A stretch of 64,000 nt of DNA from Haliotis rubra (Eukaryota), in NCBI RefSeq assembly GCF_003918875.1, contig NW_025765186.1, forward strand, positions 62,001 to 126,000, written 5' to 3'. The notes beneath the pieces are model-generated. The model did not search any database. It saw only the letters and a list, made by a program, of their open reading frames with translations, and was not told where the DNA came from. Below, in pieces: positions 22,801 to 64,000 of this stretch. The position numbers were made by a program, and so were the translations under genes. Every line of letters begins with the position of its first letter. Position 1 is the stretch's first letter.

Positions 22801-25147
22801 GTCCTCCTAAACAAAATGCACCTATTAGACAAAGGTGCTGGGTTTCCCTCCGTGTTGATTCCTGTCACCGGGGGGCGTCGGGGTAGCCTAGTGGTTAAAG
22901 CGTTGGCTCGTCACGCCGAAGACCCGGGTTCGAATCCCCACATGGGTACAATCTGTGAAACCCATTTCTTGTGTCCCCCGCCGTGATGTTGCTGGAATAT
23001 TGCTAAAAGCGGCGTAAAACCAAACTCAGTCAGTCAGTCAGTCAGTCCTGTCACCGGATCAGTAAGTTGTTCCCAGGACTAAATAGTGATGTGGTAAGGA
23101 GAGTAATGACATTTACCTTGTCTCATGGCAATACCGACCTGATTCACAATCTGTACCATAATGGGCGTCAATACATCCAGACACACAGGAGGACCCAAGC
23201 TGACAATATCCTCCATCACAACCACCTGGACATGCTGTACAGTTACCTCCTGGACTGTCACATGGTATGTTGCATCTCTGACCTTGATATCCTGGCTCAC
23301 AACCCTCGGTGCACCGTCCACTACCTTCAGCAGATTGATTACACAGGTTACCTTTACAATGACCATCGCACACAGAGAAACATTTTAGATCAAAGTACCC
23401 CGTGTCACACTCAGTGAGGCAATGTCCCGTCGTGTTGTCACAGTCAGAACAGTGCTGGTTGTCCAAACACGGACCCGCTGAAATTGAAGTTATTGGTTGA
23501 TTAAAAAAAGAACATTTAGTGGACACTAAATGTGGTCTTTAGAAAACGAGGCTAATCGTAGCTCAAACTGTTCGCCAAAGACCCGGGTTCGAGTCCCCAT
23601 GTGAAGCCCATTCCTGGTGTACCACGCCGGGATATTGCTTGAATATTGTTAAAACCATATTCACTCACTCGCTAAGCGAGACAAAAGATGCCTACCTGTA
23701 TTGTGTAAGTCTGACTACCTGTATATGCCTACCTGTATTGTATAAGTCTGATTACCTGTATATGCCTACCTGTATTGTGTAAGTCTGACTACTTGTATAT
23801 GCCCACCTGTATTGTATAAGTCTGACTACCTGTATATGCCTACCTGTATTGTGTAAGTCTGACTACCTGTCTATGCCTACCTGTATTGTATAAGTCTGAC
23901 TACCTGTATATGCCTACCTGTATTGTGTAAGTCTGACTACCTGTATATGCCTACCTGTATTGTGTAAGTCTGACTACCTGTATATGCCTACCTGTATTGT
24001 GTAAGTCTGACTACCTGTATATGCCTACCTGTATTGTATAAGTCTGACTACCTGTATATGCCTACCTGTATTGTGTAAGTCTGACTACCTGTATATGCCT
24101 ACCTGTATTGTGTAAGTCTGACTACCTGTATATGCTTACCTGTATTGTGTAAGTCTGACTACCTGTATATGCCTACCTATATTGTGTAAGTCTGACTACC
24201 TGTATATGCCTACCTGTGTTGTGTAAGTCTGACTACGCCTCTAGATTTGAAAAGATAACACACAAAACACAAAACCTAATTATTACAAAAAGAAGGACCA
24301 TTCTAGATAAAGCTTTGAAATAAACATAAAGCTTCTGTGTGAATGCGAATTAGTATAGCTTTTCATTTGTATTTGAAAGTTGGATACTTAATTATACACC
24401 TACTTCGCTTGCTCAACAATATATACGCCAACTAAGGACAACGCGTCTGGCCACGATTAAGACTGTGTGACTCACAGTAATTCCTAATGAAATTTCAATA
24501 TTATTTCCATTCGACGTTTCTCGACACGTTCTGGTAGCTTAATGAAGCAATGTACATCATATTTGGATACTATCCGAAATCCATACGACAATCAACGCCT
24601 CCGTGTCAACACAACAAGAAGTTCTGTCCCCTTGTGAGGCCGTAAGCACGAAACGTTACAAGAAGATACTTGATGTTACCTTGCCTGTGCCTATCATGAC
24701 AGGAGAGAGGAATGATAAGTTTGGATTCAGTCTACTGTGCCCGTATGGGTAACCAACGTTACAAGAAGATACTTGATGTTACCTTGCCTGTGCCTATCAT
24801 GACAGGAGAGAGGAATGATAAGTTTGGATTCAGTCTACTGTGCACGTGTTGGTAACCAACGTTACAACAGTGTGGCACAGTACCCTGGTAGCGATCAAAC
24901 ATATCAGAAGTGGCCAAATACACAGATTCACACACGACGCTATTTAAGTGAAATATACCTGTACGCAAAGATAACCACCATTTGATCTCAACTCGTAAGA
25001 CAGCCCAGTCGTTATTAACATCAAAACATGTAACTGTTGTGCTAATGTTACATACACAAATTAAACAGACAAGATGTGCCAAAGCAATATTCTACCTTCA
25101 ACAGCCATTACCAGGCATGCTATCCATATGACCTCCGAGACGATCAT
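16818..25147 (-). CDS. Type I membrane receptor, ~250 aa: signal peptide, EGF-like Cys-rich ectodomain (MEGF10/SCARF-like), TM, Tyr-motif tail
   Basis: Exons 25147-25096 (MIVSEVIWIACLVMAVE), 23477-23139 (GPCLDNQHCSDC…GCIDAHYGTDCES), 22165-22054 (GAVGLSVGVSTAVFSFILMIVLVVYCKYWRR), 17067-16818 (…WYTDI…VYDVA…IYSKL..*). All GT-AG, phases 1,1,2, total 753 nt. Confidence 0.8.
17249..17692. repeat. 55-bp minisatellite, 8 copies
   Basis: Unit ACATTATCACATCACACCACTTGTCCTGTGTAGAATCAACCGTGGACATCTGGTG. Confidence 0.95.
18095..18245 (-). mobile_element. Degenerate SINE family A copy
   Basis: Reverse-complement similarity to the head and body (CCCATGTG..AATCGAA, TTTAACCACTA.GCTACC). Confidence 0.6.
18960..20192 (-). 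mobile_element. Decayed Tc1/mariner transposon
   Basis: ATG at 19920; frameshifted peptides DLPRTGHPRLTPNWQDNHIRLTHLRNRFQTA (Tc1 HTH), FGSESVMVWGVITS and ENVWDEMDRRLR (DD34E region). Confidence 0.85.
20193..20489 (+). mobile_element. tRNA-derived SINE family B (Meta/MESC-like core), 5' truncated
   Basis: GTCATA.CAAAAGACGTTAAAAT…GGTACTTG…GCCTGGCGC core and CGACGTTAAACCCAATTTCACCTCACCTC tail. Confidence 0.8.
20825..21846. repeat. 23-bp minisatellite with higher-order structure
   Basis: GGAATGTTGGGATTCCGTCACAG runs punctuated four times by a ~50-bp spacer AGACCTGTAAATACTACAGTAGTGCATGGTGTACTGACTCGCTCTGTTA. Confidence 0.95.
22135..22745. repeat. 94-bp tandem repeat (~6.5 copies) spanning the splice acceptor of the TM exon
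   Basis: Copies start at 22135, 22229, 22323, 22417, 22511, 22605 and ~22699 (degenerate). Confidence 0.9.
22870..23047 (+). mobile_element. tRNA-derived SINE family A, with target-site duplication
   Basis: Full copy flanked by TCCTGTCACCGG on both sides. Confidence 0.9.
23688..24237. repeat. 37-bp minisatellite, ~15 copies
   Basis: Unit ATGCCTACCTGTATTGTGTAAGTCTGACTACCTGTAT. Confidence 0.95.
24652..24866. repeat. 104-bp tandem duplication
   Basis: AACGTTACAAGAAGATACTTGATG…CAGTCTACTGTGC at 24652 and 24756. Confidence 0.85.
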
Positions 25148-29552: not shown

Positions 29553-29904
29553 CTAGGTGTTGAAGAGGTTATGCTTGTCAGGTGAGGCTTCTAGGTTTTG
29601 TGTACAGAGGGTCATTCTGCTCCAGTACATGTGTAGGGGTCGGAAGATCTCTGATTTTATCACTTTGTTGCCTTTACTTATTTACCACCCTGAAACAGTA
29701 TGATGAGTTCACTAAAACACCTAGCTATGACAAAGACAGCAAGACGTGAGGACCTCAAGAGGTGTTTTTAGGTTCAGCTCACCTAATTTACAGCAAAATG
29801 TGCTTGTCATGGCCTACCTGTGAGTCCGAACATCTTAAACTATCTCTGTTATTTACAATCAAGTCTCCCTACTACTTTATTTATTAGATATGTATAACTT
29901 GCCG

Positions 29905-30510
29905 TGTGTATGACCTCCCTTCGTCAGCGTATGACCTACCTTTGTCAGCGTATGACCTACCTTCGTCAGCGTATGGCATCCCTTCGTCAATGTATGACCC
30001 CCCTTCGTCAGTGTATGACCTCCCTTAGTCAGTGTACGACCTCCCTTTGTCAGTGTATGACCTCCCTTCGTTAGTGTGTATCCTTTCTTCCTCAGTGTAT
30101 GACCTCCCTTCGTCAGTGTATGACCTCCCTTCGTTAGTGTATATCCTTTCTTCCTCAGTGTATGACCTCCCTTAGTCAGTGTACGACCTCCCTTCATCAG
30201 TGTATGGCATCCCTTCGTCAGCGTATGACCTCCCTTCGTCAGCGTATGACCTCCCTTTGTCAGTGTTTGACCTCCCTTCGCCAGTGTATATCCTTTTTTC
30301 GTCAGTGTATGGCCTCCCTTCGTCAGTGTATGACCTTCGTTCGTCAGTGTATGGCCTTCCTTCGTCAGTGTATGACCTACCTTAGTCAGTGTATGACATC
30401 CTTTCGTCAGTGAATGGCCTCCCTTCGTCAGTGTAGGGCCTCCCTTCGTCAGTGTATGACCTCCCTTCGTCAGTGTATGACCTCCCTTCGTTAGTGTATG
30501 ACATCCCTTT
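29905..30510. repeat. 21-bp minisatellite, ~29 copies
   Basis: Unit GTCAGTGTATGACCTCCCTTC; ORF 29877..30539 (GGHTLTK)n is its translation. Confidence 0.95.
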
Positions 30511-30620
30511 GTCCCTGGAGGCAGTTTTGCTACAATCACCAGGCGCTCACCGTTTCAGCCTTTTCAAAAATGGGCGATGGATAGCTGTCATGCCGAATAC
30601 CCGGGTCCGATTCCTTACAT

Positions 30621-31672: not shown

Positions 31673-32419
31673 ATGGTCATAATGGTGGCCCTCGCCCTCA
31701 CGACACTGGCCAGTGTCCACGCAACTTCTCCCAATGTTCGGGTCAAGAGAAGGCCTGTAGATCAACCACATGAAGGAATGTGCTCCAACTTCTGGTGGGG
31801 TGGAATTTCTAAAGTTCACTTTTACACCTGCTGTAACAACCTGGATGAAGGTCCTAATCCCTATTGCGATGGTCGCACCTATCACAGAGCATCTAATGGA
31901 TCCTACTGTAAACCTGGTGGGTTTGACGGCGGGAACGGTGAACAACATGAATCTTACCGTTGTGGAGGATGTGATGGACAGGCCCGGGTAGCTGAGAAAT
32001 GCGAGCCATGGCCTTCACTGGATGTTGTAGGAACATGCTGGGTATTCACTAAGTGCTTCACAGACTTCTGCGAAAAGCGGTACCGAGTGAATGGGTTAAA
32101 CCTTGCAGTAAGGGATAGGCCAGGAATGCCAGACACCTGCTACAACGGAAAGTGTGATGTCGGAGAAACTACAGACAACTGCCCAGTCGACTGCTGCTAC
32201 ACGAAAAACAAACAGTGTACCTGGGGTAACAAATGTACGCAGCTATTTTGTGCCACCCCGTCTTGTGGGGTGGGGTGGAGTGGAGGTGATGGTGTGTTTA
32301 CAGCTGGGACATATGGCATCAAGATCCTGGCTGCCGCTGTGCTAGTGCTGGGTGTCTCCATTGTTTATTTTTTCAGAAGGAAGAGGCAATACAAGCGGGC
32401 ACAGTCACACAATGTTTAA
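31673..32419 (+). CDS. Uncharacterised Cys-rich type I membrane protein, 248 aa, intronless CDS
   Basis: Signal peptide MVIMVALALTTLASVHA, dibasic RVKRR, Cys-rich ectodomain including CYNGKCDVGETTDNCPVDCC, TM ILAAAVLVLGVSIVYFF, stop-transfer RRKR. Upstream acceptor CCCTTCAG at ~31638; conserved paralog at 13322. Confidence 0.85.
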   Translation: MVIMVALALTTLASVHATSPNVRVKRRPVDQPHEGMCSNFWWGGISKVHFYTCCNNLDEGPNPYCDGRTYHRASNGSYCKPGGFDGGNGEQHESYRCGGCDGQARVAEKCEPWPSLDVVGTCWVFTKCFTDFCEKRYRVNGLNLAVRDRPGMPDTCYNGKCDVGETTDNCPVDCCYTKNKQCTWGNKCTQLFCATPSCGVGWSGGDGVFTAGTYGIKILAAAVLVLGVSIVYFFRRKRQYKRAQSHNV

Positions 32420-32707
32420 AACAGATTTTCTCTTGATGAATGTTTGATAAATGTACGTTAATAGATTTTTAACAATTTGTAAATATGTTGCTTTCAACAA
32501 TAACTTAATATTCACAACGATCGCTTCGGTAACATGAAGTGATATGTAACATTCTTAGTATTTTCTTCTTTGAGAAATATTTTAGAAGTTGTGAAGATGA
32601 AGGAAAACTTCTTTGGACAGTCAACCTCTGTGTTTCGGTGTAGTTACTAACACCGTTATTAAGGAAGTGATAAAAAGAGTTGAAAGAAGGAGAATATATA
32701 CATAGCT

Positions 32708-33168
32708 GCATTGTGAGTATATACAATTGACAAGGTAGATGTCCATTGTGAGTATATACAATTGACAAGGTAGATGTACATTGTGAGTATATACAATTGA
32801 CAAGGTAGATGTAGCATTGTGAGTATATACAGTTGACAAGGTAGATGTACATTGTGAGTATACATAATTGACAAGGTAGATGTACATTGTGAGTATATAC
32901 AGTTGACAAGGTAGATGTACATTGTGAGTATATGCAATTGACAAAGTAGATGTACATTGTGAGTATATACAGTTGACAAGGTAGATGTACATTGTGAGTA
33001 TACATAATTGACAAGGTAGATGTACATTGTGAGTATATACAGTTGACAAGGTAGATGTACATTGTGAGTATATACAATTGACAAAGTAGATGTACATTGT
33101 GAGTATATACAGTTGACAAGGTAGATGTACATTGTGAGTATATAAAATTGACAAGGTAGATGTACATT
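32708..33168. repeat. 35-bp minisatellite, ~13 copies
   Basis: Unit ACATTGTGAGTATATACAATTGACAAGGTAGATGT. Confidence 0.95.
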
Positions 33169-33194
33169 GGACATCTAATTAATGATTTGGGCAG

Positions 33195-45727: not shown

Positions 45728-45919
45728 AGTGATTGAGTGAGTGAGGAGTGAGTGAGTGCAGCTAATATGTTAATGGTGGAGACCTCACAGGACGTGGAGC
45801 TCCTGCCCAACTGAGATTGTTTCGAGATGAGTCAATGATATTTCACTTGTAATGGCCAGTCCTCTGCACGTTCAAGAAGGTGCGTTCCCATGGTGCGATG
45901 TGTTGTAACACATTGTTGC

Positions 45920-46833
45920 ATGCAACAGAGTTGCAACGTCAGAACACTGTCATCATAACCTACTGTAATCTCATACACCTAGCTGCAGCAGAGGCACAAC
46001 GTCAGAACACTGTCATCATTACAAACTTTAATCTCGTACACCTAGCTGCAGCAGAGGCACAACGTCAGAACACTGTCATCATAACAAACTTTAATCTCGT
46101 ACACCTAGCTGCAGCAGAGGCACAACGTCAGAACCCTGTCATCATTACAAACTTTAATCTCGTACACCTAGCTGCAGCAGAGGCACAACGTCAGAACACT
46201 GTCATCATAACAAACTTTAATCTCATACACCTACCTAGCTGCAGCAGGGCACAACGTCAGAACACTGTCATCATAACAAACTTTAATCTCGTACACCTAG
46301 CTGCAGCAGAGGCACAACGTCAGAACACTGTCATCATAACAAACTTTAATCTCATACACCTAGCTGCAGCAGAGGGCACAACGTCAGAACACTGTCATCA
46401 TAACAAACTTTAATCTCATACACCTAGCTGCAGCAGAGGCACAACGTCAGAACACTGTCATCATAACAAACTTTAATCTCGTACACCTAGCTGCAGCAGA
46501 GGCACAACGCCAGAACACTGTCATCCTAACAAACCTTAATCTCGTACACCTAGCTGCAGCAGAGGCACAACGTCAGAACACTGTCATCATAACAAACTTT
46601 AATCTCGTACACCTAGCTGCAGCAGAGTTGCAACGTCAGAACACTGTCATCATAACAAACACTGTCATCATAACCAACTCAATCTCATACACCTAGCTGC
46701 AACAGAGTTGCAACGTCAGAACACTGTCATCATAACCAACTTTAATCTCATACACCTAGCTGCAACAGAGTTGCAACGTCAGAACACTGTCATCATAACC
46801 AACTTTAATCTCATACACCTAGCTGCAACAGAG
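45920..46833. repeat. 63-bp minisatellite, ~14 copies
   Basis: Unit GCAGCAGAGGCACAACGTCAGAACACTGTCATCATAACAAACTTTAATCTCGTACACCTAGCT. Confidence 0.95.
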
Positions 46834-51533: not shown

Positions 51534-51721
51534 NNNNNNNNNNNNNNNNNNNNNNNNNNNNNNNNNNNNNNNNNNNNNNNNNNNNNNNNNNNNNNNNNNN
51601 NNNNNNNNNNNNNNNNNNNNNNNNNNNNNNNNNNNNNNNNNNNNNNNNNNNNNNNNNNNNNNNNNNNNNNNNNNNNNNNNNNNNNNNNNNNNNNNNNNNN
51701 NNNNNNNNNNNNNNNNNNNNN
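51534..51721. other. Assembly gap (N run)
   Basis: Run of n. Confidence 1.
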
Positions 51722-52286: not shown

Positions 52287-55200
52287 ATGGAGGCATCTGG
52301 AGCAATGCTGATACTCTTACAAGCCCTACTTATATTCAGTGAGTACTAAANNNNNNNNNNNNNNNNNNNNNNNNNNNNNNNNNNNNNNNNNNNNNNNNNN
52401 NNNNNNNNNNNNNNNNNNNNNNNNNNNNNNNNNNNNNNNNNNNNNNNNNNNNNNNNNNNNNNNNNNNNNNNNNNNNNNNNNNNNNNNNNNNNNNNNNNNN
52501 NNNNNNNNNNNNNNNNNNNNNNNNNNNNNNNNNNNNNNNNNNNNNNNNNNNNACTTCGTGACCTAATGTAAATACCTAGCGCCCAAGTATAACAAGCTGT
52601 TTCTTCCTTTTCATAACGATTATAGCATCCAACAATCGATACAGGTACAATTTCCTATTTCATTTCTTGCATCAATATTTATAACCCACATCTTTGTCAC
52701 GATCCAATATTTTCTTTCTGATAAGAAACACTGTTTCAATGGTTTGCTTGCGAACGTGCGAATCCATTCTATGAAACAGGCATTTAGTTGAATTTAGTTA
52801 CACCATGCGAATCCTTTCTATGAAGCAGGAATTTAGTTGTATTTAGTTACACCATGCGAATCATTTCTATGCAGCAGGCATTTAATTGAATTTAGTTAGA
52901 CCATGCGAATCCTTTCTATGGAGCAGGCATTTAATTGAATTTAGTTAGACCATGCGAATCCTTACTATGAAGCAGGAATTTAGTTGAATTTAGTTACACC
53001 ATGCGAATCCTTTCTATGAAGCAGGCATTTAGTTGAATTTAGTTAGACCGTGCGAGTTGTGCGTGAACCCGCTTTTTGTCATCATCATATGGATGGAGTG
53101 AGAATGTAGCCTCATCATAAATATTACCTTATTGTAATGTGGTTCGACCCCGTTCGTTTCATTTTGATTTTTCAGTATTATCAGTGCACTGTCAAAACAG
53201 CTGTGACTGGGGCAAGTACGGAGACAACTGCAACAAAGACTGTCCATCCACCTGCCTTACCAACCCTGTACGAAAGCTGAAACACTGCCAGAAGGAGACA
53301 GGGAGGTGTTCTGAAGGCTGTGTTCCTGGCTGGTTTGACGATCTCTGTGACAAGGCCTGTGGCAAGAACTGCTTGAGAAACATCTGTAATCGTCAAAATG
53401 CCATCTGCACGCATGGATGTACTGGAAACTACACAGGGGAGCTTTGCAACATTAGAAAAGGTTTGACCGAAACGATTTGAATTCGTAATGGTTGATGCAG
53501 AGCTAAATGAACTCTGTATTGTATATGCATTGTGTGTAAATACATAGACCGTGTTCTTGTGCCAGTCCACCACGTGCAAAATGAGTGAGTGAGTAAGTGA
53601 GTTAATATTTAACGTCACATCGGCAATATTTCAGCCATATCGTGACGAGAACATATTTAACATTGAAATGGAAAATGTGTATACTATCAAAACCTGTCAT
53701 CGAATGACAGTTAAACAACAAGAATATCACAAATACAATTAAAACTAGTGTAAAAAGTTAAAACTAATAGCACTATTAGGACAATACAAGATAAAAACAG
53801 GCCATAGATCGCCAACAACTGAAGGTAGATCACCATACTAGGATCCATGGGGACTTACTGTACCTTTGCTACCTGCATGGACCCTAGTTGGATTTACACC
53901 ATCCCTTCAGCCGTTGGCGATTGTAGGAACAGTTTAGCCGAATTGTAAAGGAACAAATGTACTACGTTTAAGAATCGGGTAAGCAAAAATTTAACTCTGA
54001 AAGTTTTGGGACTTACGTACCCTCTCAGGAGGACAATAATTTTACGATACTTTAACCCCCTTCGAGGATACAGTCACTAACAATCACAGTTACTAATTTA
54101 TACTTACCATCATAAAATATGGACATGCTTGACTGTGATTCTTTCATCACAAGGGATTCAAAATGGAGGATCCTCACCTTTTAATAGGTATTCTTGAGTA
54201 TATCTTGTGTGGCCAATACGACATCGTCGTATGATGACCTCTTCAAATCTGGACTGACAACCCAAGTAGGTGTAACCAGTGTAGGGTTTTATTTCATGTA
54301 ATTTATTGATAACGTGCAAAATGAAGCCACCGCTGATGAAAGTCATTGTTCATGTAGTTCAGTATGCAGGGTAGGTAATCGCGTAAAGGTAAAACAACAA
54401 ACTGTAACATGTAAAACGGTTAAGGTGCTGAAGCCAACACAGGTAATTCTTTATAACGTATCTGTGTTGTGTTTTTGTATCTTGATACACATCCAATAGA
54501 TACATTTAAGGTACTGTTATTTGAATCATATAATTCTTGTTCATCAAAAGCAGTAACAGTTGTTCCCGAGACACCGACGAAAGCACCTTCTGACTCGAAC
54601 TCAACACAACCGACGAACGCATCTTCTGACTCGAACTCAACACAACCGACGAAAGCATCTTCTGACTCGAACTCAGCACAACCGACGAATCTTGCTGCGA
54701 TCCTTGCCCCAGTGTTCATCGTCATCATCATCGTCACTATCATCATTGCTGTGGTGATGTTCAGACTGTAAGTACATATTCTACTAGAAGTTGTGAGTAT
54801 ATGAGTTTGAATTAAATGAATAAACTGACAGTTTCTGACATATGTATTGCCTGTCAGGGGCCATGCTATATTTCACATATTGGGAAACATGGTAAATGCT
54901 GTCATACAATCTCTGTGTAGATGTCCATGCATAATATATAAAACACATGCCTCAGTATTGCCACATGTACTTTTACAGAAGGAAGTGCAAAGCGATAAGA
55001 ACACCTAGAGGTCAGCCGGATAAACGTGCACGGTAAGGAAATACTCTTTATTCAACATTTATGCATGTGAAAGTGCATCTTAGGAAACGTACTCTGTGAA
55101 ATCTTCAGAATAACTAAAACAAAAAAGCGTAACTCATGATCAAGAGTTGTGATGCCCAAATATTTAGTGTAAAAAACTACTTATTAATACTTTGTAAGGC

Positions 55201-58200
55201 AAATGCATATTTTTCATTGCAGTTCTGATGAAAACAGTAAGTATACCTTATTCAAAATCATTTCGCTTGCACAAAGACGTGCCATGTAAACACACAAATA
55301 GCTGGAATGTGACAAATTATATAGCATATTGTAATCATATAGCATAACGACTGCACCTACTGTTTCGGATATAGCACAACACATATCCGCAGTATTATCT
55401 TTCAAGTCACCACTCCAGGCTGATTCGATGACTTTCGACTGATTTCTGCTTAGTGTGTGTGTAGTTTCCAAATCCTTTGCTCAGTTCTTAACACGTCTAT
55501 ACTCAATTCAAATTCAATTCAACTTCAAAGTCACATGTCATTCACTTCTTCAACAAAAATGCCAATACCTTCAATACAGAAGACTTGACTTCTTTTCTTC
55601 ATCAGTCCTTCAATGATTGACATTAATATATATGCTGATGCAGGTCCTCAAATCCTTAATCATATAGAGCCAACACTCCAAATCCAAATCCACGCCTAAC
55701 ACCACTACATGGAGTCCCTCTGACCATGTACTCACATCTCTAGTCATGTGTCAACTCATAGAATTACTTCCCTTGGCCCCTGGCTGGAGCGAACTGTCCC
55801 AAAATGTAGACCAATTTAGTTTCGCACAAAAATATGTTTCAACATAAAATAATTCCAAAGCATAATTTTGGCCATAACAGTGTGGGTTTATTTTCTCATT
55901 TCCCACTTGAATTCAAGATCCTGTAGTTTCAGGATTAACAAGTCACTGTTTCTTGAACATCGTTATGCCCATAATTATTTCATTAACGTAATTTCAATTT
56001 TCTCGAGATAGATTTATAGGATTATTGTGTCATTTTTGCACAAGCTCCACGTGTTTCTTCATCTTCGTCATTATAACCATACAACTGAACCATCAACGTT
56101 TTTTTATCAATGTGCATGTCAGCTGGGACATAGAAATAATCATTTACCATAACGTATAAGTACATATTTGTTAAATATGTTTAATTTGACTGCCAAATAC
56201 CATTTCAGCTTCTTTAATGGAGAAGCCGCCTGCACCAGCTCAGAACAGTAAGTTAAATGTTAATTGACCTTCCAGTATATCGATGATCTTCTGTGAGAAG
56301 AGAACATCAAAATAACATCTTGTTACTCGTTTTTGGCTTTGATTGACACGGTAACTGTCGAAGTAAATGTTTTATTCTTAAATTCTGTGTTATACTTTAA
56401 CACACTTTGACATGTTCTGTAACTCCATAGTGTATATTATTTTGGCAGCTTCGTCTCAGGATGAGGAAATACAAGGCACTCTTACACTACAGACAGGTAT
56501 AAATTGAATTCTCTTCTGCACTTTACTTTTGTGAGACAGAAGTATTTGTTGGTATACAACTTGCAAATATTCACATCTTCTGTATTCCAGAGTTTGATAT
56601 TTACAATGGTTAATCAACAAATGTAATCATTCAGTGTCCTCTATTACAATCAAACTTCAGGTGTTTGTATTTATTTGAACAGATTTGCCATACGAGCTGA
56701 TGAGGGATATCACTGACATCTTCGTTGAAACCGACAGTTTCAAAAAGGTGAAAGAAAAACTGGAAAAGTTTGGCCACGTGACAATAAGCGGTGGTCCAGG
56801 AGCAGGTAAAACACCCGTGGCCCTGATGCTTGGAGCTGAATTCAGGAAACGGCGGTATGAAGTGGTACTGGTTGAGGACGTTGGTACTTTCCAGTTGTCT
56901 GAGTGTCTGTGTAAGAGCAAAGACGTATGTGTCATATTCGATGACGTATTTCAAAACGCTGGGCCATCTATAGACGTACATCGCCTGACACAAGTTCTCT
57001 ATGAGCTCCATGGACATTGTGAACCGTGGACAAGCAAATTGGAAAGAGGATATCACAATCTGCAGCAGACGCCAGGAACCGAACATAGAAGCAACGACCA
57101 TCCAAACCTGTATTTCATATTCACCACAGATACCAAAAAGTTTCAATGTGCAATGTCAAAATTTAAAGACCCTATATTTTTCCAATACTGGTCTATCGTT
57201 GACGTGACCAAACTGAAAGATGAAGAGAAAAAAGCAATATGGATGAAACACAAAAGCCATTTCAAATGTCAAACAAATGTCGACGTGAAAATGATTATTG
57301 AGTACAAAGATATAATTGGTTTTCCATTGACATGCAAACTTTTCTCTAGTCACATGCCCTTTCAAAAACTCAAAGAATCGTTTTTTGAGATGCCTGTTTA
57401 CCATCTTAAACGTGAACTGGATATGATCGTTAATCAGCTGGATGACACGTCATTGAAACTCCTGTTGACATCACTATGTTGCAGCGAACAGAAACTCAAA
57501 CACAGAAAATCAGAACTCCACACTAAATGTGACAACAAAGTACAAAACACGCACCTAAGGGATGTTTTAGCTCTTGTCTCATGTTCCCATCCTCTAATAC
57601 AGGACATGTGTATGTCTGCCATATTGGATACTAAACCAGAGCTGTTCCTCCATAACTGTAGTTTAGCGTTCATCTGTGACCATGTACGTGATCAGCAGCA
57701 TGACACCGCTCCAGCAGAACAGACTGTCATTTATTTCCCAGGTGCTCATAGTGACGTCATCACCGCCAGGCTGGCTGAAGCTGTTGCTGATGGCACGTTC
57801 AGTAACTACATCATGCATCCCATCTGGAAAAGGGGGGAAGTTGCAGACAAAGTGCAACAAATGCTTGGACATGAAGGCACTATGTCACGTGATACTAAGC
57901 ACAGTATTCTCCATTATTCCTGTTTCCTGGGGAACAATGACGCAATAAAACGACTCCTCCCCAACTGTGACATCAACAGACGTGCTGTGAATGGTTGGAC
58001 GCCAGCTATGTTCGCGGTTGCTGGTGGACAGATGGACAGTTTGGATCTCCTTGTGAAGCATAAAGCTGATATCACATAACTTGATGCTATGAACAATGAC
58101 CTATTCCACTTGGCTTGTCAATACACAGACATTTCGGTTGTGAAAATAGTTAAAAGTTTGCTGAAAAAGAGTAAGGCTTGGCATATTAACTGCCGAGGAA

Positions 58201-61200
58201 TGAATGACTGGACACCGATTACGTGTGCAGTTTTCTCTGGTAAGAATGATATCTTGGACTATCTTGTCCACAAAAAGAAAACTGACTTAACATTAAGAGA
58301 TAGCAACAACAACACTGTTCTTCATCTGGCATGTTTGTATGGAAATGAATCCATTGTTAATTCGTTGTTACCATCAACAGACAAAGACGGTCATGGGAGA
58401 AACGGCATGACGCCTGTGATGTGTGCTCTATTGTCAGGGAGGATGGATGTGTTTAACCTTCTCGTGTCACAAAATGCAGACACGGCATTGACCGACGATG
58501 ATAACAACAGTCTCCTTCATTTAGCCTGCCTCCTTGATGACATACCCAGCATCCTACTAACAAAGATTGACGCTGATACTCAAGGAAATCACGGTTGGAC
58601 GCCTCTAATGAAGGCAGCTGTCAATGGATCAAAACATGCATTTGACCAGCTGGACAAAGCAAAGGCTAATCTTTACCCGAAAGACGACAACAGCAACAAT
58701 ATCCTTCACCTGGCATGCCATGGTGGACATGTCTCCATTGTGAAACATCTACTGACAACGTATGACATGAACAGTCGTGGGAATAAAGGATGGACGCCAG
58801 TTATGTATGCAGCTGCCAATGGCTCGAAGGACGTGTTTGACCTGCTTGTGTCTAAGGGTGCTGACTTATCCTTGAAGGATGACTACAGCAACTCTGTATT
58901 TCACTTAGCATGTGTAGGTGGGAACCTATCCATTGTGGAATATCTGCTGCCAAAATCTGACATCAATATCCGGGACAATTATGGAAGGACTGCAATTATG
59001 ACAGCAGCATCTGCAGGCCAAAGTGTTGTCTTTGACGTTCTTTTGTCGAAAAAAGCTGATCTTACAATGTCTGACGAGTACAATGACACTGTCCTACATT
59101 GTGCATGTGCGGGAGGAAATCGATCCGTTGTAGAATATTTACTGGAAAGAATTGACAACAATATTAAAGGAAAGAATAGCTGGACACCAGTGATGGTTGC
59201 AGCTCGCTTTGGAAAGTTAGAGCCTTTCAACCTGCTTGCTTCAAAAGACGCCGATCTCACTCTGATTGACGATCACGGAAACAATCTGCTTCACCTCGCA
59301 TGTCAGGGTGGAAACAGGTTGATCGTGGAAGATCTGCTTCCAAAATTTGACATAAACAGTCGTGGACATAAGGGCAGAACACCTTTGATGCATGCAGCTG
59401 TGAATGGACTGAGAGAAGTGTTTGACCTCCTTATGTCAAAGGGGGCTGATTTTTCACTGAAGGATGAAAACAACAATTCTGTTTTTCATTTGGCTTGTCG
59501 TGGTAGAAATATGTCCATTGTAGAAGGACTCCTACCACATTTTGATGTCAACGGTTTGGAAGATAAAGGTAGGACAGCAATAATGAAGGCCGCTTGTGCT
59601 GGAAATAAGAGTGTCTTCGACTTTCTACTTTCAAAGAACGCCGACCTGTCCATAACTGATGACTACAAAGACAATGTTCTGCATTTTGCATGTAAGGGAG
59701 GTGGGACGAAAATTGTTCAAAATATTCTTCACAGATTTGACATTAATGCTCTGGGAAGGAATGGGGTCACTCCAGTCATGCTGGCTGCTGAATTTGGAAA
59801 CAGAAATATTTTTGACAAACTTGTTTCAAAGCAAGCAGATCTTACTCTCACTGACGACTACAGGAACAACATACTTCACTTTGCATATCAGGGTGGAAAC
59901 AGTTTCATCGTAGATCACCTGCTTTCACTGCCATTTGATATTGGCGTCAACAACCGTGGAAGACATGGCTTGAACCCCGTAATGGTTGCAGCTCGGTTTG
60001 GAATGTTAGACCCTTTCAACTTGCTTCTTGCGAAAGAAGTGGATTTCACTGTGACTGACGACCATTGTAACAACATGCTTCACCTTGCATGCCAGGGTGG
60101 AAATTTAACAATCATCGAGCGTGTTCTTCAAGAGTTTGACATCAATAGTCGTGGACAAGATGGCAGGACACCTTTGATGTATGCAGCTGTTGGTGGACGA
60201 AAGAACGTGTATGGTCTGCTTGTGTCAAAGGGGGCTGAACTGAAGGATGATCATAGGAGCTTCAGAACAAGTGTCATTGACATGTTTACGCCCGGAAAAG
60301 CTGACCCCTTACTGACCGGTGGCCACAGGGATAACGTGCTGCATTCTGCATGTCAAGGAGGGAACACAACCATTGTAAGACATCTTCTGAAGAATATTGA
60401 TATCAATGTCAAAGGACAGAACGGCCTTACACCAATAATGCATGCAGCCAGGGCTGGAAAGAAGATTGTGTTCAACCTACTTCTTTCAGAAAAGGCCAAC
60501 AGGAAACTACTTGATCACTACATAAACAATGTGCTCCATTTCGCTTGCCAAGGTGGCAATAGATCCATCATAGAACAACTCCTAAACGAGTTTGACATCA
60601 ACGGCCCTGGAGAGGATGGATGGACGCCAATAATGATGGCAGCTCTCAGTGGAAAGATGGATGCTTATGATCTGATTGCAACAAATGGGGGTATTCCATC
60701 TTTGACTACTCCACAGAATGACAATGTTCTTCATGCAGCTTGTCAAGGTGGAAACAAAGCCCTTGTTAAGAAGGTCATCGGCAGCTTTGGCATCAACACA
60801 AGGGGTAAGAATGGTTGCACGGCCCTGATGAGAGCTGTTGTTGGAGGCCATATGAGTGTGATGAAGTTCCTGATGTCCCGGCATGCTGACCATACTCTGG
60901 TGGACAAGGATGGACTCACTCTTCTACATCTTGCGTGCAAATTTGGTCACCTTGACATTGTGAAGCATATCTCAGACAAGTTCAATATAAATATTAAAGA
61001 CAAGGCTGGTTTAACATACATCATGACATCAATATTGTATGGTAAAGTGGAAATATTTGACTACTTGAAAAGAAAAGGCGCGGATTTGTCTCTAGTTGAC
61101 AACACAGGAGATGACGCCTCTAGCCTTGCGCTTAAAGTAGGCTGCAGACAAATCTTAGAAAGACTTCCACCGAAGGGAGAGTCAGAGAAGAACGTCGAAC

Positions 61201-61610
61201 CATGGAATGAACTGATGAAGTCACTTGTAAAGAAGGAGTCATGTAATCTGCAGATGTACAGATCAAAGAGTCCTGAACTGAAACAAAAAGGCCAGACTGG
61301 AGACACATTACTCCATCTGGCCTGTCGAGGAGGCAACAGACACTGTGTGGAGTTCCTGCTCCCGTCCTATGACATCAATGTCAGAGGTCGGTACAACTGG
61401 ACACCGGTGATGATGGCGGCTGCATGTGGACATACTGATATCTTCAAGCTGCTGGTGGATCACAAGTCAGATCTCTCTCTGGTCTCAGACACGGGAGAAG
61501 ATCTCCTCAGTCTACTAAGAGAAGCAACAACAGTGACATTGTTGACGCAGTCAGAAACATGCACACCGTTGATGCATAGAGCAGGTAATTCTGACAATTC
61601 ATTTGTGTGA
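52287..61610 (+). CDS. Transmembrane STAND-ankyrin receptor: signal peptide, EGF-like ectodomain, Ser/Thr stalk, TM, nSTAND3-like NTPase, ~35 ankyrin repeats (in-frame TAA at 58077-58079)
   Basis: Exons 52287-52338, 53176-53460, 54551(or 54554)-54767, 54979-55032, 55223-55236, 56209-56247, 56449-56496, 56683-61610. All GT-AG, phases 1,1,2,2,1,1,1, total 5637 nt. Walker A GGPGAGKT, Walker B VCVIFDDVF; TM LAAILAPVFIVIIIVTIIIAVVMF followed by RLRKCK. Confidence 0.8.
52351..52552. other. Assembly gap (N run) inside intron 1 of the receptor gene
   Basis: Run of n. Confidence 1.
52757..53055. repeat. 49-bp minisatellite, ~6 copies
   Basis: Unit ACCATGCGAATCCTTTCTATGAAGCAGGCATTTAGTTGAATTTAGTTAC. 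Confidence 0.9.
53582..54312 (-). mobile_element. I/Nimb-clade LINE 3' end (intronic, antisense)
   Basis: EEVIIRRCRIGHTRYTQEYLLKGEDPPF, a 3' UTR, and tail GATGTGACGTTAAATATTAACTCACT.ACTCACTC. Confidence 0.8.
56683..58079 (+). CDS. nSTAND3-like P-loop NTPase domain plus first ankyrin repeats (5' part of last exon)
   Basis: FVETDSFKKVKEKLEKFGHVTISGGPGAGKT, VIFDDVF, FIFTT, IGFPLTCKLF, SHPLIQD; ends ADIT-TAA. Confidence 0.85.
58089..61610 (+). CDS. Ankyrin-repeat array (3' part of last exon, same frame as the NTPase)
   Basis: Alternating 'G.TP.M.A...G' and 'N.LH.AC.GG' repeats over 1173 aa. Confidence 0.9.
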   Translation: MNNDLFHLACQYTDISVVKIVKSLLKKSKAWHINCRGMNDWTPITCAVFSGKNDILDYLVHKKKTDLTLRDSNNNTVLHLACLYGNESIVNSLLPSTDKDGHGRNGMTPVMCALLSGRMDVFNLLVSQNADTALTDDDNNSLLHLACLLDDIPSILLTKIDADTQGNHGWTPLMKAAVNGSKHAFDQLDKAKANLYPKDDNSNNILHLACHGGHVSIVKHLLTTYDMNSRGNKGWTPVMYAAANGSKDVFDLLVSKGADLSLKDDYSNSVFHLACVGGNLSIVEYLLPKSDINIRDNYGRTAIMTAASAGQSVVFDVLLSKKADLTMSDEYNDTVLHCACAGGNRSVVEYLLERIDNNIKGKNSWTPVMVAARFGKLEPFNLLASKDADLTLIDDHGNNLLHLACQGGNRLIVEDLLPKFDINSRGHKGRTPLMHAAVNGLREVFDLLMSKGADFSLKDENNNSVFHLACRGRNMSIVEGLLPHFDVNGLEDKGRTAIMKAACAGNKSVFDFLLSKNADLSITDDYKDNVLHFACKGGGTKIVQNILHRFDINALGRNGVTPVMLAAEFGNRNIFDKLVSKQADLTLTDDYRNNILHFAYQGGNSFIVDHLLSLPFDIGVNNRGRHGLNPVMVAARFGMLDPFNLLLAKEVDFTVTDDHCNNMLHLACQGGNLTIIERVLQEFDINSRGQDGRTPLMYAAVGGRKNVYGLLVSKGAELKDDHRSFRTSVIDMFTPGKADPLLTGGHRDNVLHSACQGGNTTIVRHLLKNIDINVKGQNGLTPIMHAARAGKKIVFNLLLSEKANRKLLDHYINNVLHFACQGGNRSIIEQLLNEFDINGPGEDGWTPIMMAALSGKMDAYDLIATNGGIPSLTTPQNDNVLHAACQGGNKALVKKVIGSFGINTRGKNGCTALMRAVVGGHMSVMKFLMSRHADHTLVDKDGLTLLHLACKFGHLDIVKHISDKFNINIKDKAGLTYIMTSILYGKVEIFDYLKRKGADLSLVDNTGDDASSLALKVGCRQILERLPPKGESEKNVEPWNELMKSLVKKESCNLQMYRSKSPELKQKGQTGDTLLHLACRGGNRHCVEFLLPSYDINVRGRYNWTPVMMAAACGHTDIFKLLVDHKSDLSLVSDTGEDLLSLLREATTVTLLTQSETCTPLMHRAGNSDNSFV

Positions 61611-62384: not shown

Positions 62385-64000
62385 TGAATGTGAACAATGC
62401 AGATATATGATCTTAATTGAATGTGTACAATGCACATGTATGTTGCTAGGTGAATTTGTAGAATGTAGACCTATGTTGCTAGGTGAATGTGTAGAATGTA
62501 GACCTATGTTGCTAGGTGAATGTGTAGAATGTAGACCTATGTTGCTAAGTGAATGTGTACATTGTAGACCTATGTTGCCAGGTAAATGTGTAGAATGTAG
62601 ACCTATGTTGCTATGTGAATGTGTGCAATGCAGACCTATGATGTTATGTGGATGTGTACAATAATGCACATGTATGTTGCTATGTGAATGTGTAGAATGC
62701 AGATATATGATCTTAATTGAATGTGTACAATGCATATGTATGTTGATATGAGAATGTGTACAATGCACAAGTTTGTTGCTATGTGAATGTGTACAAAGCA
62801 AATATATGTTGCTATGTGGATGTGTACAATGCACATGTATGTTCCTATGTGAATGTGTACAATGCAGATTTATGATCTTAATTGAAAGTGTACAATGTAC
62901 ATTATGTTACTATGTAAATGTGTAGAATGTACATGTATGTTGCTATGTGAATGTGTAGAATGTAGACCTCTGTTGCTATGTGAATGTGTACAATGTAGAC
63001 CTATGTTGCTATGTGAATGTGTACAATGCAGACCTGTGTTGCTATATGAATGTGTAAAACGCACATGTATGTTGTTATGTGAATGTGTACAATGTACATG
63101 TATGTTGCCATGTGAATGTGTACAATGCACATGTAGGCTGACAGGTGAATGTGTACACTGCACATGTGTGTTGCCAGGTGAATGTGTACAATGCACATGT
63201 ATGTTACCAGGTGAATGTGTACAATGCACATATATGTTGCCAGGTGAATGTGTACAATGCACATGTATGTTGCCAGGTGAATGTGTACAATGCACATATA
63301 TGTTGCCAGGTGAATATGTACAATGCAGACCTATGTTGCTATGTGAATGTGTAGAATGCACATGAAAGTTGATATGTGAATGTGTACAATGTAGACCTAT
63401 GTTGCTATGTGAATGTGTACAATGTAGACCTATGTTGCTATGTGAATGTGTACAATGTAGACCTATGTTGCTCTATGAATGTGTACATTGTAGACCTATG
63501 TTGCTATGTGAATGTGTAAAATGTAGACCTATGTTGTTATGTGAATGTGTACAATGTAGACCTATGCTGTTATGGGAATATATACAATACAGGCCTATGA
63601 TGTTATGTGAAAATGTATAATGTAGACCTATGCTGTTATGTGAATATGTCCAATGCAGACCTATGATGTTATGTGAATATGTGTAATGTAGACAGATGAT
63701 GTTATGTTAATATGGACAATGCAGACCTATGATGCCATGTGAATATGTATAATGTAGACCTATGATGTTATTAGAATATGTACAATGTAGACATATGATG
63801 TTATGTGAATATGTACAATGTAGACCTATGATGTTATGAGAATATGTACAATGTAGACCTATGATGTTATGTGAATATGTACAATGTAGACCTATGATAT
63901 TATGTGAATATGTTCAATGGAGACCATTGATCTTATTGGAATGTGTCCAATGCAGACCTATGATGTAATGTGAATATGTATAATGTAGACATATCGTGTT
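62385..64000. repeat. 33-bp minisatellite, degenerate, runs off window end
   Basis: Unit GTGAATGTGTACAATGTAGACCTATGTTGCTAT; the His/Cys-rich ORFs here are periodic translations. Confidence 0.95.

What the first reader, a model, noticed from the sequence alone, without database searches (positions are those of the whole stretch)
52287..61610. Membrane-spanning NLR-like receptor: EGF ectodomain-TM-nSTAND3 NTPase-ankyrin array
Seen: eight GT-AG exons splice in frame with no phase conflict. They give MEASGAMLILLQALLIFILSVHC (signal peptide), an EGF-like Cys-rich ectodomain, a Ser/Thr stalk with SDSNSTQPT repeats, a TM helix, four cytoplasmic micro-exons, then a Walker A/B STAND-type NTPase and ~35 ankyrin repeats (~1878 aa if read through). 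Established: STAND NTPases with superstructure-forming repeats (NLRs, bacterial Avs) are typically cytosolic sensors with an N-terminal or C-terminal effector. Inference: here the slot N-terminal to the NTPase is filled by an extracellular receptor module, suggesting a surface receptor that couples outside ligand binding to STAND oligomerisation, or a membrane-anchored intracellular sensor. I know of no characterised system with this topology, but cannot exclude existing annotations.
Basis: partly seen in the sequence, partly recalled or inferred. Interest (0 to 1): 0.9.

Follow-up and report, generated by a model that had tools for sequence, protein, structure and literature searches.

The report
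Membrane-anchored STAND-ankyrin receptor gene, broken copy
This abalone gene belongs to a large abalone-specific family of cell-surface proteins that join a small EGF-like outer domain to an NLR-style molecular switch and a long ankyrin array. The design is real and uncharacterised, but it is already annotated, has a published oyster precedent, and this copy is cut by a stop codon.

Summary
It gives 1877 codons in frame, with one internal TAA at 58077-58079.

- **Identity.** The spliced product up to that stop is identical to Haliotis rubra LOC124266550 (XP_046557307/8, "uncharacterized protein"). RefSeq calls the ankyrin ORF after the stop as a separate 1067-aa protein.
- **The N gap.** It lies in intron 1. 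The exon 1/exon 2 junction, all four micro-exons and all phases are conserved in the intact H. asinina ortholog (1736 aa), so no coding exon is hidden.
- **NTPase.** Pfam confirms nSTAND3 (4.7e-17) and ankyrin repeats. Walker A/B, a GxP motif and a conserved His are present, and the fold model best matches SAMD9 and Avs5.
- **Ectodomain.** It is EGF-like only at fold level (SCARF1/2, PEAR1, MEGF10/11, Draper).
- **Family.** About 40 RefSeq clusters in four Haliotis species share the layout, mostly misnamed "phosphatase 6 regulatory ankyrin subunit-like".
- **Selection and history.** dN/dS is equal on both sides of the stop (0.30 and 0.33), so the break is recent, allelic or an error. The ectodomain is strongly constrained (about 0.08), and its tree conflicts with the NTPase tree, which indicates module shuffling.
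- **Precedent.** Kaur et al. 2021 listed oyster TM-Cys-rich-TM-TRADD-N-nSTAND3-ankyrin proteins.

Verdict: a TRADD-N-less variant of a known kind. Function is untested.

The parts
51534..51721 (.). Assembly gap upstream of exon 1. Together with the next gap it leaves exon 1 on a 629-bp island.
52287..52338 (+). Exon 1: ATG plus 17 codons and 1 nt (phase 1). This is the n- and h-region of the signal peptide.
   Evidence: It matches the first 17 residues of the H. asinina and H. rufescens orthologs. The same exon size is seen in L001.
52351..52552 (.). Assembly gap (N) inside intron 1. It is not coding.
   Evidence: Its letters were neither read nor looked up.
53176..53460 (+). Exon 2: the end of the signal peptide plus a 16-Cys ectodomain of two SCARF/MEGF-type EGF-like modules.
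   Evidence: Alignment A2 has 11 invariant Cys, and the other 5 are conserved in at least 90% of sequences. The model has pLDDT 85. Foldseek matches SCARF1 8hna at 2.1e-3, and also SCARF2, PEAR1, MEGF10/11, Draper and CED-1. dN/dS against H. asinina is about 0.08.
54554..54767 (+). Exon 3: a Ser/Thr stalk (36-bp coding repeat x3.2 at 54573-54689, with N-glycosylation sequons), a single TM helix, and the start of the basic stop-transfer motif. Alternative acceptors lie at 54551 and 54560.
   Evidence: The RefSeq isoforms X1/X2 differ exactly at these acceptors.
54979..55032 (+). Exon 4 (54 nt): basic juxtamembrane segment.
55223..55236 (+). Exon 5: a 14-nt micro-exon.
   Evidence: An exon of the same 14 nt with the same splice sites is present in H. 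asinina.
56209..56247 (+). Exon 6 (39 nt). It carries the conserved L[IVM]EK[QP]P[EA] linker motif and a Met that some RefSeq isoforms of paralogs use as their start.
56449..56496 (+). Exon 7 (48 nt): acidic linker.
56683..57854 (+). Exon 8, first part: the nSTAND3 STAND NTPase module. It has Walker A GGPGAGKT, Walker B IFDD, a GFPL motif in the helical domain and a conserved His in the winged-helix region.
   Evidence: Pfam PF20720 at 4.7e-17. Invariant residues in A1. Model with pLDDT 81. Foldseek top matches are SAMD9 and Avs5.
57855..58076 (+). Exon 8: the first two ankyrin repeats, before the stop.
58077..58079 (+). In-frame TAA (codon 701) within an ankyrin repeat. The close orthologs shown have Leu here, as do 101 of 148 aligned relatives.
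58080..61610 (+). Exon 8, rest: about 33 further ankyrin repeats in 65-aa double units, a C-terminal tail and TGA. RefSeq calls 58407-61610 as a separate 1067-aa protein.
   Evidence: dN/dS is 0.33, the same as upstream of the stop.

Best explanation
The locus is Haliotis rubra LOC124266550 plus the ankyrin-only gene model just downstream of it. Together they are one ancestral eight-exon gene of an abalone-specific expanded family.

Intact family members are type I membrane proteins with these parts, in order:
- a signal peptide;
- two SCARF/MEGF-type EGF-like modules;
- a glycosylated Ser/Thr stalk;
- one TM helix;
- a disordered linker of about 52 residues built from four micro-exons, alternatively spliced in paralogs;
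- an nSTAND3 STAND NTPase (P-loop domain, helical domain with GxP, winged helix with His);
- about 35 ankyrin repeats.

In this assembly a single TAA cuts the gene after the second ankyrin repeat. As sequenced it therefore encodes a 700-aa membrane-anchored NTPase without its array. The break is recent, allelic or an error.

Proposed mechanism for intact members (inferred, not shown): they are the membrane-tethered branch of a mostly cytosolic nSTAND3-ankyrin sensor family. The variable ankyrin array holds the NTPase off and binds a ligand on the cytoplasmic face. Nucleotide exchange then drives oligomerisation under the membrane. The conserved EGF-TM module sits in the N-terminal slot where other STAND proteins carry an effector or adaptor. 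It localises the switch and becomes clustered at the cell surface as the output or partner-binding part. The role is probably innate immunity or cell death.
For: **Gene model.** All eight exons, their phases and the 14-nt micro-exon are conserved in the intact H. asinina ortholog. The spliced product is identical to XP_046557308.1 apart from a tandem-acceptor choice. Of the 246 relatives fetched up to, 50 share the ecto-TM-NTPase-ANK layout. All 19 long proteins with this ectodomain carry nSTAND3 and ANK.

**STAND identity.** Pfam nSTAND3 scores above its cut-off. Walker A/B, GFPL and His are invariant or nearly invariant in 69 homologs, including this copy. The best fold matches are SAMD9, Avs5 (an nSTAND3 protein according to PMC12931631), NLRP3 and Dark.

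**Recent break.** dN/dS is 0.30 upstream and 0.33 downstream of the TAA. There is no other lesion in the 1176 codons after it.

**Sensor in the ankyrin array, conserved N-terminal module.**
- About three quarters of the fetched NTPase relatives have no ectodomain or TM helix, but they have the same NTPase-ANK core.
- Ectodomain dN/dS is about 0.08, against about 0.3 for the NTPase and ankyrin array.
- Ankyrin repeat variation is concentrated at a few positions on a fixed scaffold.
- The ectodomain and NTPase trees conflict (AU p 3e-11 and 4e-8), so the EGF-TM module moves as a cassette.

**Immune context by analogy.** The analogues are the oyster TRADD-N-nSTAND3-ANK receptors, Avs5 and SAMD9.
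Against: - No transcript, protein or functional data were available. RefSeq isoforms are predictions whose RNA support I could not inspect.
- No effector or adaptor domain is recognisable anywhere in the protein or in cytosolic paralogs, so the output step is a guess.
- The TM helix has no polar residues that would suggest a pore.
- This copy is truncated. Its closest H. rubra paralog (LOC124264503, 92% identical) is also split into two models at a different place. This sub-lineage may therefore be decaying.
- The nSTAND3 profile matches only positions 1-75 of 155 in this copy.
- The ectodomain dN/dS rests on 89 codons.
Confidence: 0.55

Rival explanations
1. Outside-in receptor. The EGF-like ectodomain binds an extracellular ligand such as a microbe, a dying cell or a haemocyte partner. 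The resulting clustering drives nSTAND3 oligomerisation, and the ankyrin array acts as a cytoplasmic scaffold for downstream factors.
For: The ectodomain's best structural matches are the ligand-binding EGF repeats of scavenger and engulfment receptors: SCARF1/2, PEAR1, MEGF10/11, Draper and CED-1. Kaur et al. proposed external triggering for oyster receptor-like TRADD-N proteins. The linker between the TM helix and the NTPase is short (about 52 aa) and alternatively spliced in paralogs, so it could tune coupling.
Against: The ectodomain is small (two modules) and very conserved (dN/dS about 0.08). Most family members lack it. A disordered linker is a poor transmitter of conformational change. 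The NPxY/YxxL motifs used by MEGF10/Draper-type receptors are absent from the linker.
Confidence: 0.25
2. The TAA is a sequencing or assembly error, or one null allele. In that case the species carries an intact gene of about 1877 aa.
For: It is a single-base difference from the Leu codon that the close orthologs shown carry. The remaining 1176 codons are open, with dN/dS 0.33, equal to the upstream part. All invariant NTPase residues are retained.
Against: The stop is present in the assembly that RefSeq annotated, and RefSeq ends the protein there. The sister paralog is also broken. Earlier unchecked notes report frameshifted paralogs elsewhere in this genome.
Confidence: 0.3
3. The split is functional. 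The locus would make a 700-aa membrane-anchored NTPase lacking the array (a constitutive or decoy form) and a separate 1067-aa ankyrin protein, as RefSeq annotates.
For: RefSeq models exist for both halves. Other short family members (412-698 aa) are annotated in H. rubra and H. rufescens. Purifying selection continues across both halves.
Against: The downstream ORF has no promoter, intron or start of its own that is conserved in orthologs; in H. asinina it is simply the continuation of the last exon. Equal dN/dS is also what a very recent break would give.
Confidence: 0.12
4. Two unrelated neighbouring genes, an EGF-TM gene and an NTPase-ankyrin gene, have been joined by chance splice sites.
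For: Exon 8 has an in-frame Met six codons in, and some paralogs start near there or in exon 6.
Against: The same junctions, phases and micro-exons occur in H. asinina. About 40 independent RefSeq clusters show the same join. In the length range searched, the ectodomain was found only together with nSTAND3-ANK.
Confidence: 0.02

Closest known systems
Haliotis RefSeq models of the same family, e.g. XP_067653391.1 (H. asinina, 1736 aa, intact ortholog), XP_046557307/8 (H. rubra LOC124266550, this locus) and XP_046555194 (LOC124264503, sister copy)
   Same: Same exon structure and same order of SP, EGF-like domain, stalk, TM, linker, nSTAND3 and ANK. The H. asinina ortholog is 76-80% identical in every domain. 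The locus's own RefSeq model is 100% identical to the spliced product.
   Different: The intact orthologs read Leu where this copy has TAA. They are named 'serine/threonine-protein phosphatase 6 regulatory ankyrin repeat subunit B-like' or 'uncharacterized', with no functional description.
[quoted passage not shown] XP_022297444.1)
   Same: A mollusc lineage-specific expansion with a Cys-rich ectodomain, a TM helix, the same NTPase clade (nSTAND3) and a C-terminal ankyrin array. It is a predicted immune or apoptotic receptor.
   Different: The oyster proteins carry an alpha-rich/DED module and an NCOA6-type TRADD-N adaptor between the membrane and the NTPase, and are about 2650 aa long. The abalone proteins have only a disordered linker of about 52 aa and no recognisable adaptor. 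I could not compare the two ectodomains directly.
Bacterial Avs5 / AVAST type 5 (SIR2-nSTAND3-TPR; PDB 9jap, 9nc9)
   Same: Same Pfam NTPase family (PF20720) and among the best fold matches. Tripartite logic of N-terminal module, STAND switch and C-terminal repeat sensor.
   Different: Avs5 is cytosolic, has an enzymatic SIR2 effector at the N-terminus, and uses TPR/Sel1/PPR repeats rather than ankyrin. Sequence identity is about 10%.
Human SAMD9/SAMD9L (PDB 9zjz and others)
   Same: Best Foldseek match to the NTPase model (2.8e-5). It is a STAND-type antiviral and growth-control switch.
   Different: SAMD9 has no TM helix, ectodomain or ankyrin array, and has different flanking domains. The TM-score is low (0.33-0.38).
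Animal and plant NLRs (NACHT or NB-ARC plus LRR)
   Same: STAND switch plus a superstructure-forming repeat array. Lineage-specific expansion with broken copies.
   Different: The NTPase clade differs (no NACHT or NB-ARC hit), the repeats are ankyrin rather than LRR, the protein is membrane-spanning, and there is no CARD, PYD, TIR or CC effector.
SCARF1/2, MEGF10/11, PEAR1, Draper, CED-1 scavenger and engulfment receptors
   Same: Type I membrane proteins whose ectodomain EGF-like repeats are the best structural matches to exon 2.
   Different: Those receptors have many EGF repeats (often with an EMI domain) and tails with NPxY/YxxL or Ser/Pro-rich motifs. Here there are only two modules, no such motifs, and a STAND-ankyrin cytoplasmic part. 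The sequence-level match is not significant.

Membership tests
STAND NTPases, nSTAND3 clade (Pfam PF20720) | Profile match above the curated cut-off | tested here: met
   62.5 bits against a cut-off of 27.2, E 4.7e-17. Only profile positions 1-75 of 155 are aligned in this copy. The match is full-length in other mollusc relatives.
STAND NTPases, nSTAND3 clade (Pfam PF20720) | Intact Walker A (GxxxxGK[ST]) and Walker B (hhhhDD) | tested here: met
   GGPGAGKT and VCVIFDD are present. G41 and K42 are invariant and D86/D87 nearly invariant in 69 homologs.
STAND NTPases, nSTAND3 clade (Pfam PF20720) | P-loop domain followed by a helical domain (GxP) and a winged helix with a conserved His | tested here: met
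   GFPL (G212, F213, P214) and H302 are conserved. The model has pLDDT 81 with helices and a beta-hairpin after residue 240. Foldseek's top matches are SAMD9, Avs5, NLRP3 and Dark, but VIA-align ranks only generic AAA+ domains over residues 1-240.
STAND NTPases, nSTAND3 clade (Pfam PF20720) | C-terminal superstructure-forming repeats | tested here: met
   About 35 ankyrin repeats, Ank_2 E 1e-170. In this copy they are separated from the NTPase by the TAA.
STAND NTPases, nSTAND3 clade (Pfam PF20720) | Nucleotide-dependent oligomerisation | not testable with these tools
   This needs biochemistry or multimer modelling.
NLR (NACHT or NB-ARC plus LRR) | NACHT or NB-ARC domain | tested here: not met
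   No NACHT or NB-ARC hit at E up to 0.1. nSTAND3 is found instead.
NLR (NACHT or NB-ARC plus LRR) | Leucine-rich repeat sensor | tested here: not met
   Only ankyrin repeats are found.
Oyster receptor-like TRADD-N-nSTAND3-ankyrin proteins (Kaur et al. 2021) | Cys-rich ectodomain plus TM helix upstream of nSTAND3-ankyrin | tested here: met
   compared with the architecture strings.
Oyster receptor-like TRADD-N-nSTAND3-ankyrin proteins (Kaur et al. 2021) | DED/alpha-rich region and NCOA6-type TRADD-N between the TM helix and the NTPase | tested here: not met
   Only about 52 residues lie between the TM helix and the NTPase. The ortholog's residues 1-215 give no Pfam hit.
SCARF/MEGF10/Draper-type EGF receptors | EGF-like repeats of the SCARF/MEGF type | tested here: inconclusive
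   At fold level: SCARF1 8hna E 2.1e-3 (probability 0.96) and SCARF2 5.2e-3. Sequence profiles are not significant.
SCARF/MEGF10/Draper-type EGF receptors | Many EGF repeats, and a cytoplasmic tail with NPxY/YxxL-type motifs | tested here: not met
   There are two modules only and no such motif in the linker.
PPP6 regulatory ankyrin repeat subunits (ANKRD28/44/52), the RefSeq name of most relatives | Ankyrin-only soluble protein with no NTPase, signal peptide or TM helix | tested here: not met
   The relatives carry nSTAND3 and many carry SP-EGF-TM. The name reflects ankyrin similarity only.

The most novel reading that the evidence does not exclude
Intact members of this abalone family are true transmembrane STAND receptors. 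Binding of an extracellular ligand to the SCARF-like EGF modules would directly gate nSTAND3 oligomerisation under the plasma or phagosomal membrane. The reverse is also possible: cytoplasmic sensing by the ankyrin array would cluster the EGF modules on the cell surface as an inside-out 'infected cell' flag for haemocytes. Either way this would be a signalling mode not shown for any STAND protein.
Probability: 0.2. Interest if true: 0.8.

Novelty: new variant of a known kind. Interest (0 to 1): 0.42.

Why it matters
STAND/NLR switches are generally treated as cytosolic sensors. A large, conserved family that fuses one directly to a cell-surface EGF module, without the Death-fold or TRADD-N adaptors seen in oysters, is a simple natural system for asking how a STAND oligomer can be coupled to a membrane.

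The result also shows that many abalone genes named 'phosphatase 6 regulatory ankyrin subunit-like' are really nSTAND3 receptors. Ankyrin-gene expansions have been linked loosely to disease and heat resilience in abalone (PMC12627906, PMC5405107). That link was made for ankyrin genes in general, not for this family.

For this particular locus the value is smaller. The gene is already annotated and carries a premature stop.

Tried and rejected
- **Sequence searches for EGF.** Pfam on exon 2, a profile against PDB sequences and Pfam on 41 ectodomains gave only sub-threshold TIL, defensin, EGF_STAB and EGF_laminin hits. The EGF call therefore rests on fold search alone.
- **VIA-align on the NTPase model** returned only generic AAA+ lids and cores and did not discriminate STAND.
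- **Exact look-ups of contigs.** Searches for the 1173-aa downstream ORF, for P0186 and for P0273 found nothing. I therefore could not read neighbouring annotation or find spliced transcript contigs.
- **Search for mid-sized fragments** to catch RNA-seq-derived contigs found only RefSeq models.
- **N-terminal regions of ten cytosolic paralogs** showed no Death, DED, TIR, CARD or other effector domain.
- **Literature searches** for abalone work on this family, or on 'phosphatase 6 regulatory ankyrin' genes, found nothing specific. A search for transmembrane NLRs in invertebrates gave no clear precedent beyond Kaur et al..
- **Rejected readings:** a mini-intron skipping the TAA (no GT..AG around it), and a separate-genes reading.

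Full report
**1. Observation**

The eight exons are 52287-52338, 53176-53460, 54554-54767, 54979-55032, 55223-55236, 56209-56247, 56449-56496 and 56683-61610. All have AG acceptors, GT donors and matching phases. Together they give 5634 nt, or 1877 codons plus TGA.

There is exactly one internal stop, TAA at 58077-58079 (codon 701). It lies in the middle of an ankyrin repeat, and no GT..AG pair could remove it.

The other described parts are present:
- **Stalk.** A 36-bp coding repeat, 3.2 copies, with four N-glycosylation sequons in the ectodomain and stalk.
- **TM helix.** One 24-residue hydrophobic segment followed by RLRKCK, which fits a type I topology.
- **Micro-exons.** Four, of 54, 14, 39 and 48 nt.

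**2. The gaps**

The flagged gap (52351-52552) lies in intron 1. A second gap (51534-51721) means exon 1 sits on a 629-bp island. Physical continuity therefore cannot be shown from the window. I did not read or look up the missing letters.

Coding continuity is supported independently:
- Exon 1 ends and exon 2 starts in phase 1.
- The 17 residues of exon 1 are conserved in orthologs, which join them directly to the exon 2 sequence.
- In the H. asinina locus (L001) exon 1 is also 17 codons plus 1 nt, followed by a 7.9-kb intron.

No coding exon is hidden in the gap. The intron may simply be much longer than it looks.

**3. Domains**

*NTPase and ankyrin array.* Pfam gives nSTAND3 (PF20720) at E 4.7e-17, 62.5 bits against a cut-off of 27.2, although only profile positions 1-75 of 155 align. 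The ankyrin hits are overwhelming.

An alignment of 69 homologous NTPase regions (A1) shows these conserved features, all retained in this copy:
- invariant Walker A G41 and K42;
- nearly invariant Walker B D86 and D87;
- a GFPL motif in the helical domain;
- an invariant His302 and Arg362.

*Ectodomain.* It is not significantly EGF by sequence. An alignment of 41 ectodomains shows 11 invariant Cys, with the other 5 conserved in at least 90% of sequences. The model has pLDDT 85. It matches only EGF-type modules, best of all SCARF1 (8hna, 2.1e-3). SCARF2, PEAR1, MEGF10/11, Draper, CED-1 and laminin LE also match.

*Ankyrin array.* It is built from 65-aa two-repeat units. The scaffold is fixed and variation is concentrated at a few positions.

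**4. What the locus is**

An exhaustive HMMER search with the NTPase found 125 cluster representatives. The closest are all from Haliotis.

Of the 246 proteins fetched up to (about 40 distinct clusters, in H. rufescens, H. rubra, H. cracherodii and H. asinina) have the same layout. The ectodomain is at about residues 12-120, the TM helix at about 115-170, nSTAND3 from about 200-260, and ankyrin repeats follow. Lengths are 1400-1770 aa. Most are auto-named 'serine/threonine-protein phosphatase 6 regulatory ankyrin repeat subunit B-like', which is a misnomer.

The spliced product of this window, up to the TAA, is identical to H. rubra LOC124266550:
- Isoform X2 (XP_046557308.1, 698 aa) differs only in using the acceptor at 54560.
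- Isoform X1 (XP_046557307.1, 701 aa) uses the acceptor at 54551.

RefSeq calls the downstream ankyrin ORF as a separate 1067-aa protein, 100% identical to 58407-61610. The window is therefore H. rubra. The gene is already annotated, and it is annotated as two genes because of the stop.

**5. Is the join real?**

The intact H. asinina ortholog (XP_067653391.1, 1736 aa) is 76-80% identical in each domain. It has the same exons, including the 14-nt micro-exon with the same splice sites, and an uninterrupted 4.58-kb last exon.

In the length range searched, every protein with this ectodomain also has nSTAND3 and ankyrin repeats.

RefSeq isoforms of an H. rubra paralog differ only by 3-, 11- and 20-residue linker segments. 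The TM helix and NTPase stay joined in all of them, which indicates micro-exon alternative splicing. Some isoforms of paralogs start at the Met in exon 6 and would be cytosolic.

I could not inspect RNA evidence directly.

**6. The stop**

The close orthologs shown have Leu at this position, as do 101 of 148 aligned relatives.

Against H. asinina, dN/dS is 0.30 upstream and 0.33 downstream of the stop. There is no further lesion in the remaining 1176 codons. The break is therefore recent, allelic or an error.

The sister copy in H. rubra (LOC124264503, 92% identical) reads through this position but is itself split into two models further down. Earlier unchecked notes on this genome report other frameshifted paralogs. 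This pattern fits birth-and-death evolution of a large receptor family.

**7. Extra findings**

- **Ectodomain selection.** dN/dS is about 0.08 and dS about 0.95, against a dS of 0.40 for the last exon. This rests on only 89 codons.
- **Conflicting histories.** Trees of the ectodomain and of the NTPase for 34 full-length proteins disagree. The NTPase data reject the ectodomain 'type B' clade (AU p 3e-11), and the ectodomain data reject the NTPase clade containing this gene (p 4e-8). The EGF-TM cassette has been exchanged among paralogs.
- **Most relatives lack it.** About three quarters of the fetched NTPase relatives have no ectodomain or TM helix. Their N-termini have no recognisable domain.
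- **Membrane anchoring recurs elsewhere.** Examples are Saccostrea echinata XP_061196016.1 and an unnamed SP-TM-nSTAND3-ANK protein encoded on contigs of about 4 kb.

**8. Mechanism**

Shown:
- the architecture;
- intact NTPase motifs;
- a conserved gene structure;
- a recent break.

Inferred:
- The constant core of the family is nSTAND3-ankyrin, and the N-terminal slot varies. The ankyrin array is therefore most likely the sensor and autoinhibitor, as in other STAND proteins.
- The conserved EGF-TM cassette is most likely a localisation, output or partner-binding module that oligomerisation clusters.

No effector domain is recognisable, so the output step is unknown.

**9. Comparison and novelty**

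[quoted passage not shown] The abalone family lacks the DED/TRADD-N module and fuses the receptor part almost directly to the NTPase.

It is not an NLR in the strict sense, because it has no NACHT or NB-ARC domain and no LRR. It is also not a PPP6 regulatory subunit.

I rate it a new variant of a known kind. It is computationally visible in public annotation and experimentally uncharacterised, and this particular copy is broken.

Noticed in passing
window 23113-23526 (-): A second Cys-rich EGF-like exon, about 37-40% identical to the ectodomain of the finding. It has no Pfam hit, and there is no NTPase or ankyrin sequence nearby. It probably belongs to another EGF-type receptor gene.
   Followed up: partly
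window 31673-32419 (+): A single-exon ORF of 248 aa with a signal-peptide-like start, many Cys, a C-terminal TM helix and a short basic tail. It has no Pfam family.
   Followed up: partly
window 3784-5769 (+) and 6462-9414 (-): A 661-aa ORF with DUF6589 (6e-35), and on the other strand fragments of a RecQ-like helicase (DEAD 2e-15, RecQ_Zn_bind). They may be parts of a mobile element.
   Followed up: partly
window 62385-63994, and ORFs with periodic translations at 56-553, 20954-21956, 29877-30539, 32505-33174 and 45880-46413: A 33-bp minisatellite of 48.7 copies lies just downstream of the gene. Several other regions give periodic ORF translations that look like minisatellites.
   Followed up: no
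window 52757-53055: A 49-bp tandem repeat of 6.1 copies inside intron 1.
   Followed up: no
window 54573-54689: The coding 36-bp stalk repeat has 3.2 copies here, two in the sister H. rubra copy and one in H. asinina. Stalk length therefore varies between close relatives.
   Followed up: partly
window 54551-54560: Three tandem AG acceptors lie at the start of exon 3.
   Followed up: yes
window 56209-56247 (exon 6): A short linker motif, L[IVM]EK[QP]P[EA], is conserved across otherwise divergent paralogs. It could be a docking motif. The Met inside it is the start of some RefSeq isoforms that lack the ectodomain and TM helix.
   Followed up: partly
family level (proteins P0136-P0229; trees): The ectodomain and NTPase phylogenies conflict strongly, which indicates cassette exchange of the EGF-TM exons among tandem paralogs. 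Many paralogs sit on a single chromosome-scale contig in H. cracherodii and in H. asinina.
   Followed up: partly
H. rubra contig of 384,244 bp (P0279, P0186, P0149, P0167, P0275): The sister copy LOC124264503 is 92% identical to this gene. It is also split into two RefSeq models, at a different place in the ankyrin array.
   Followed up: partly
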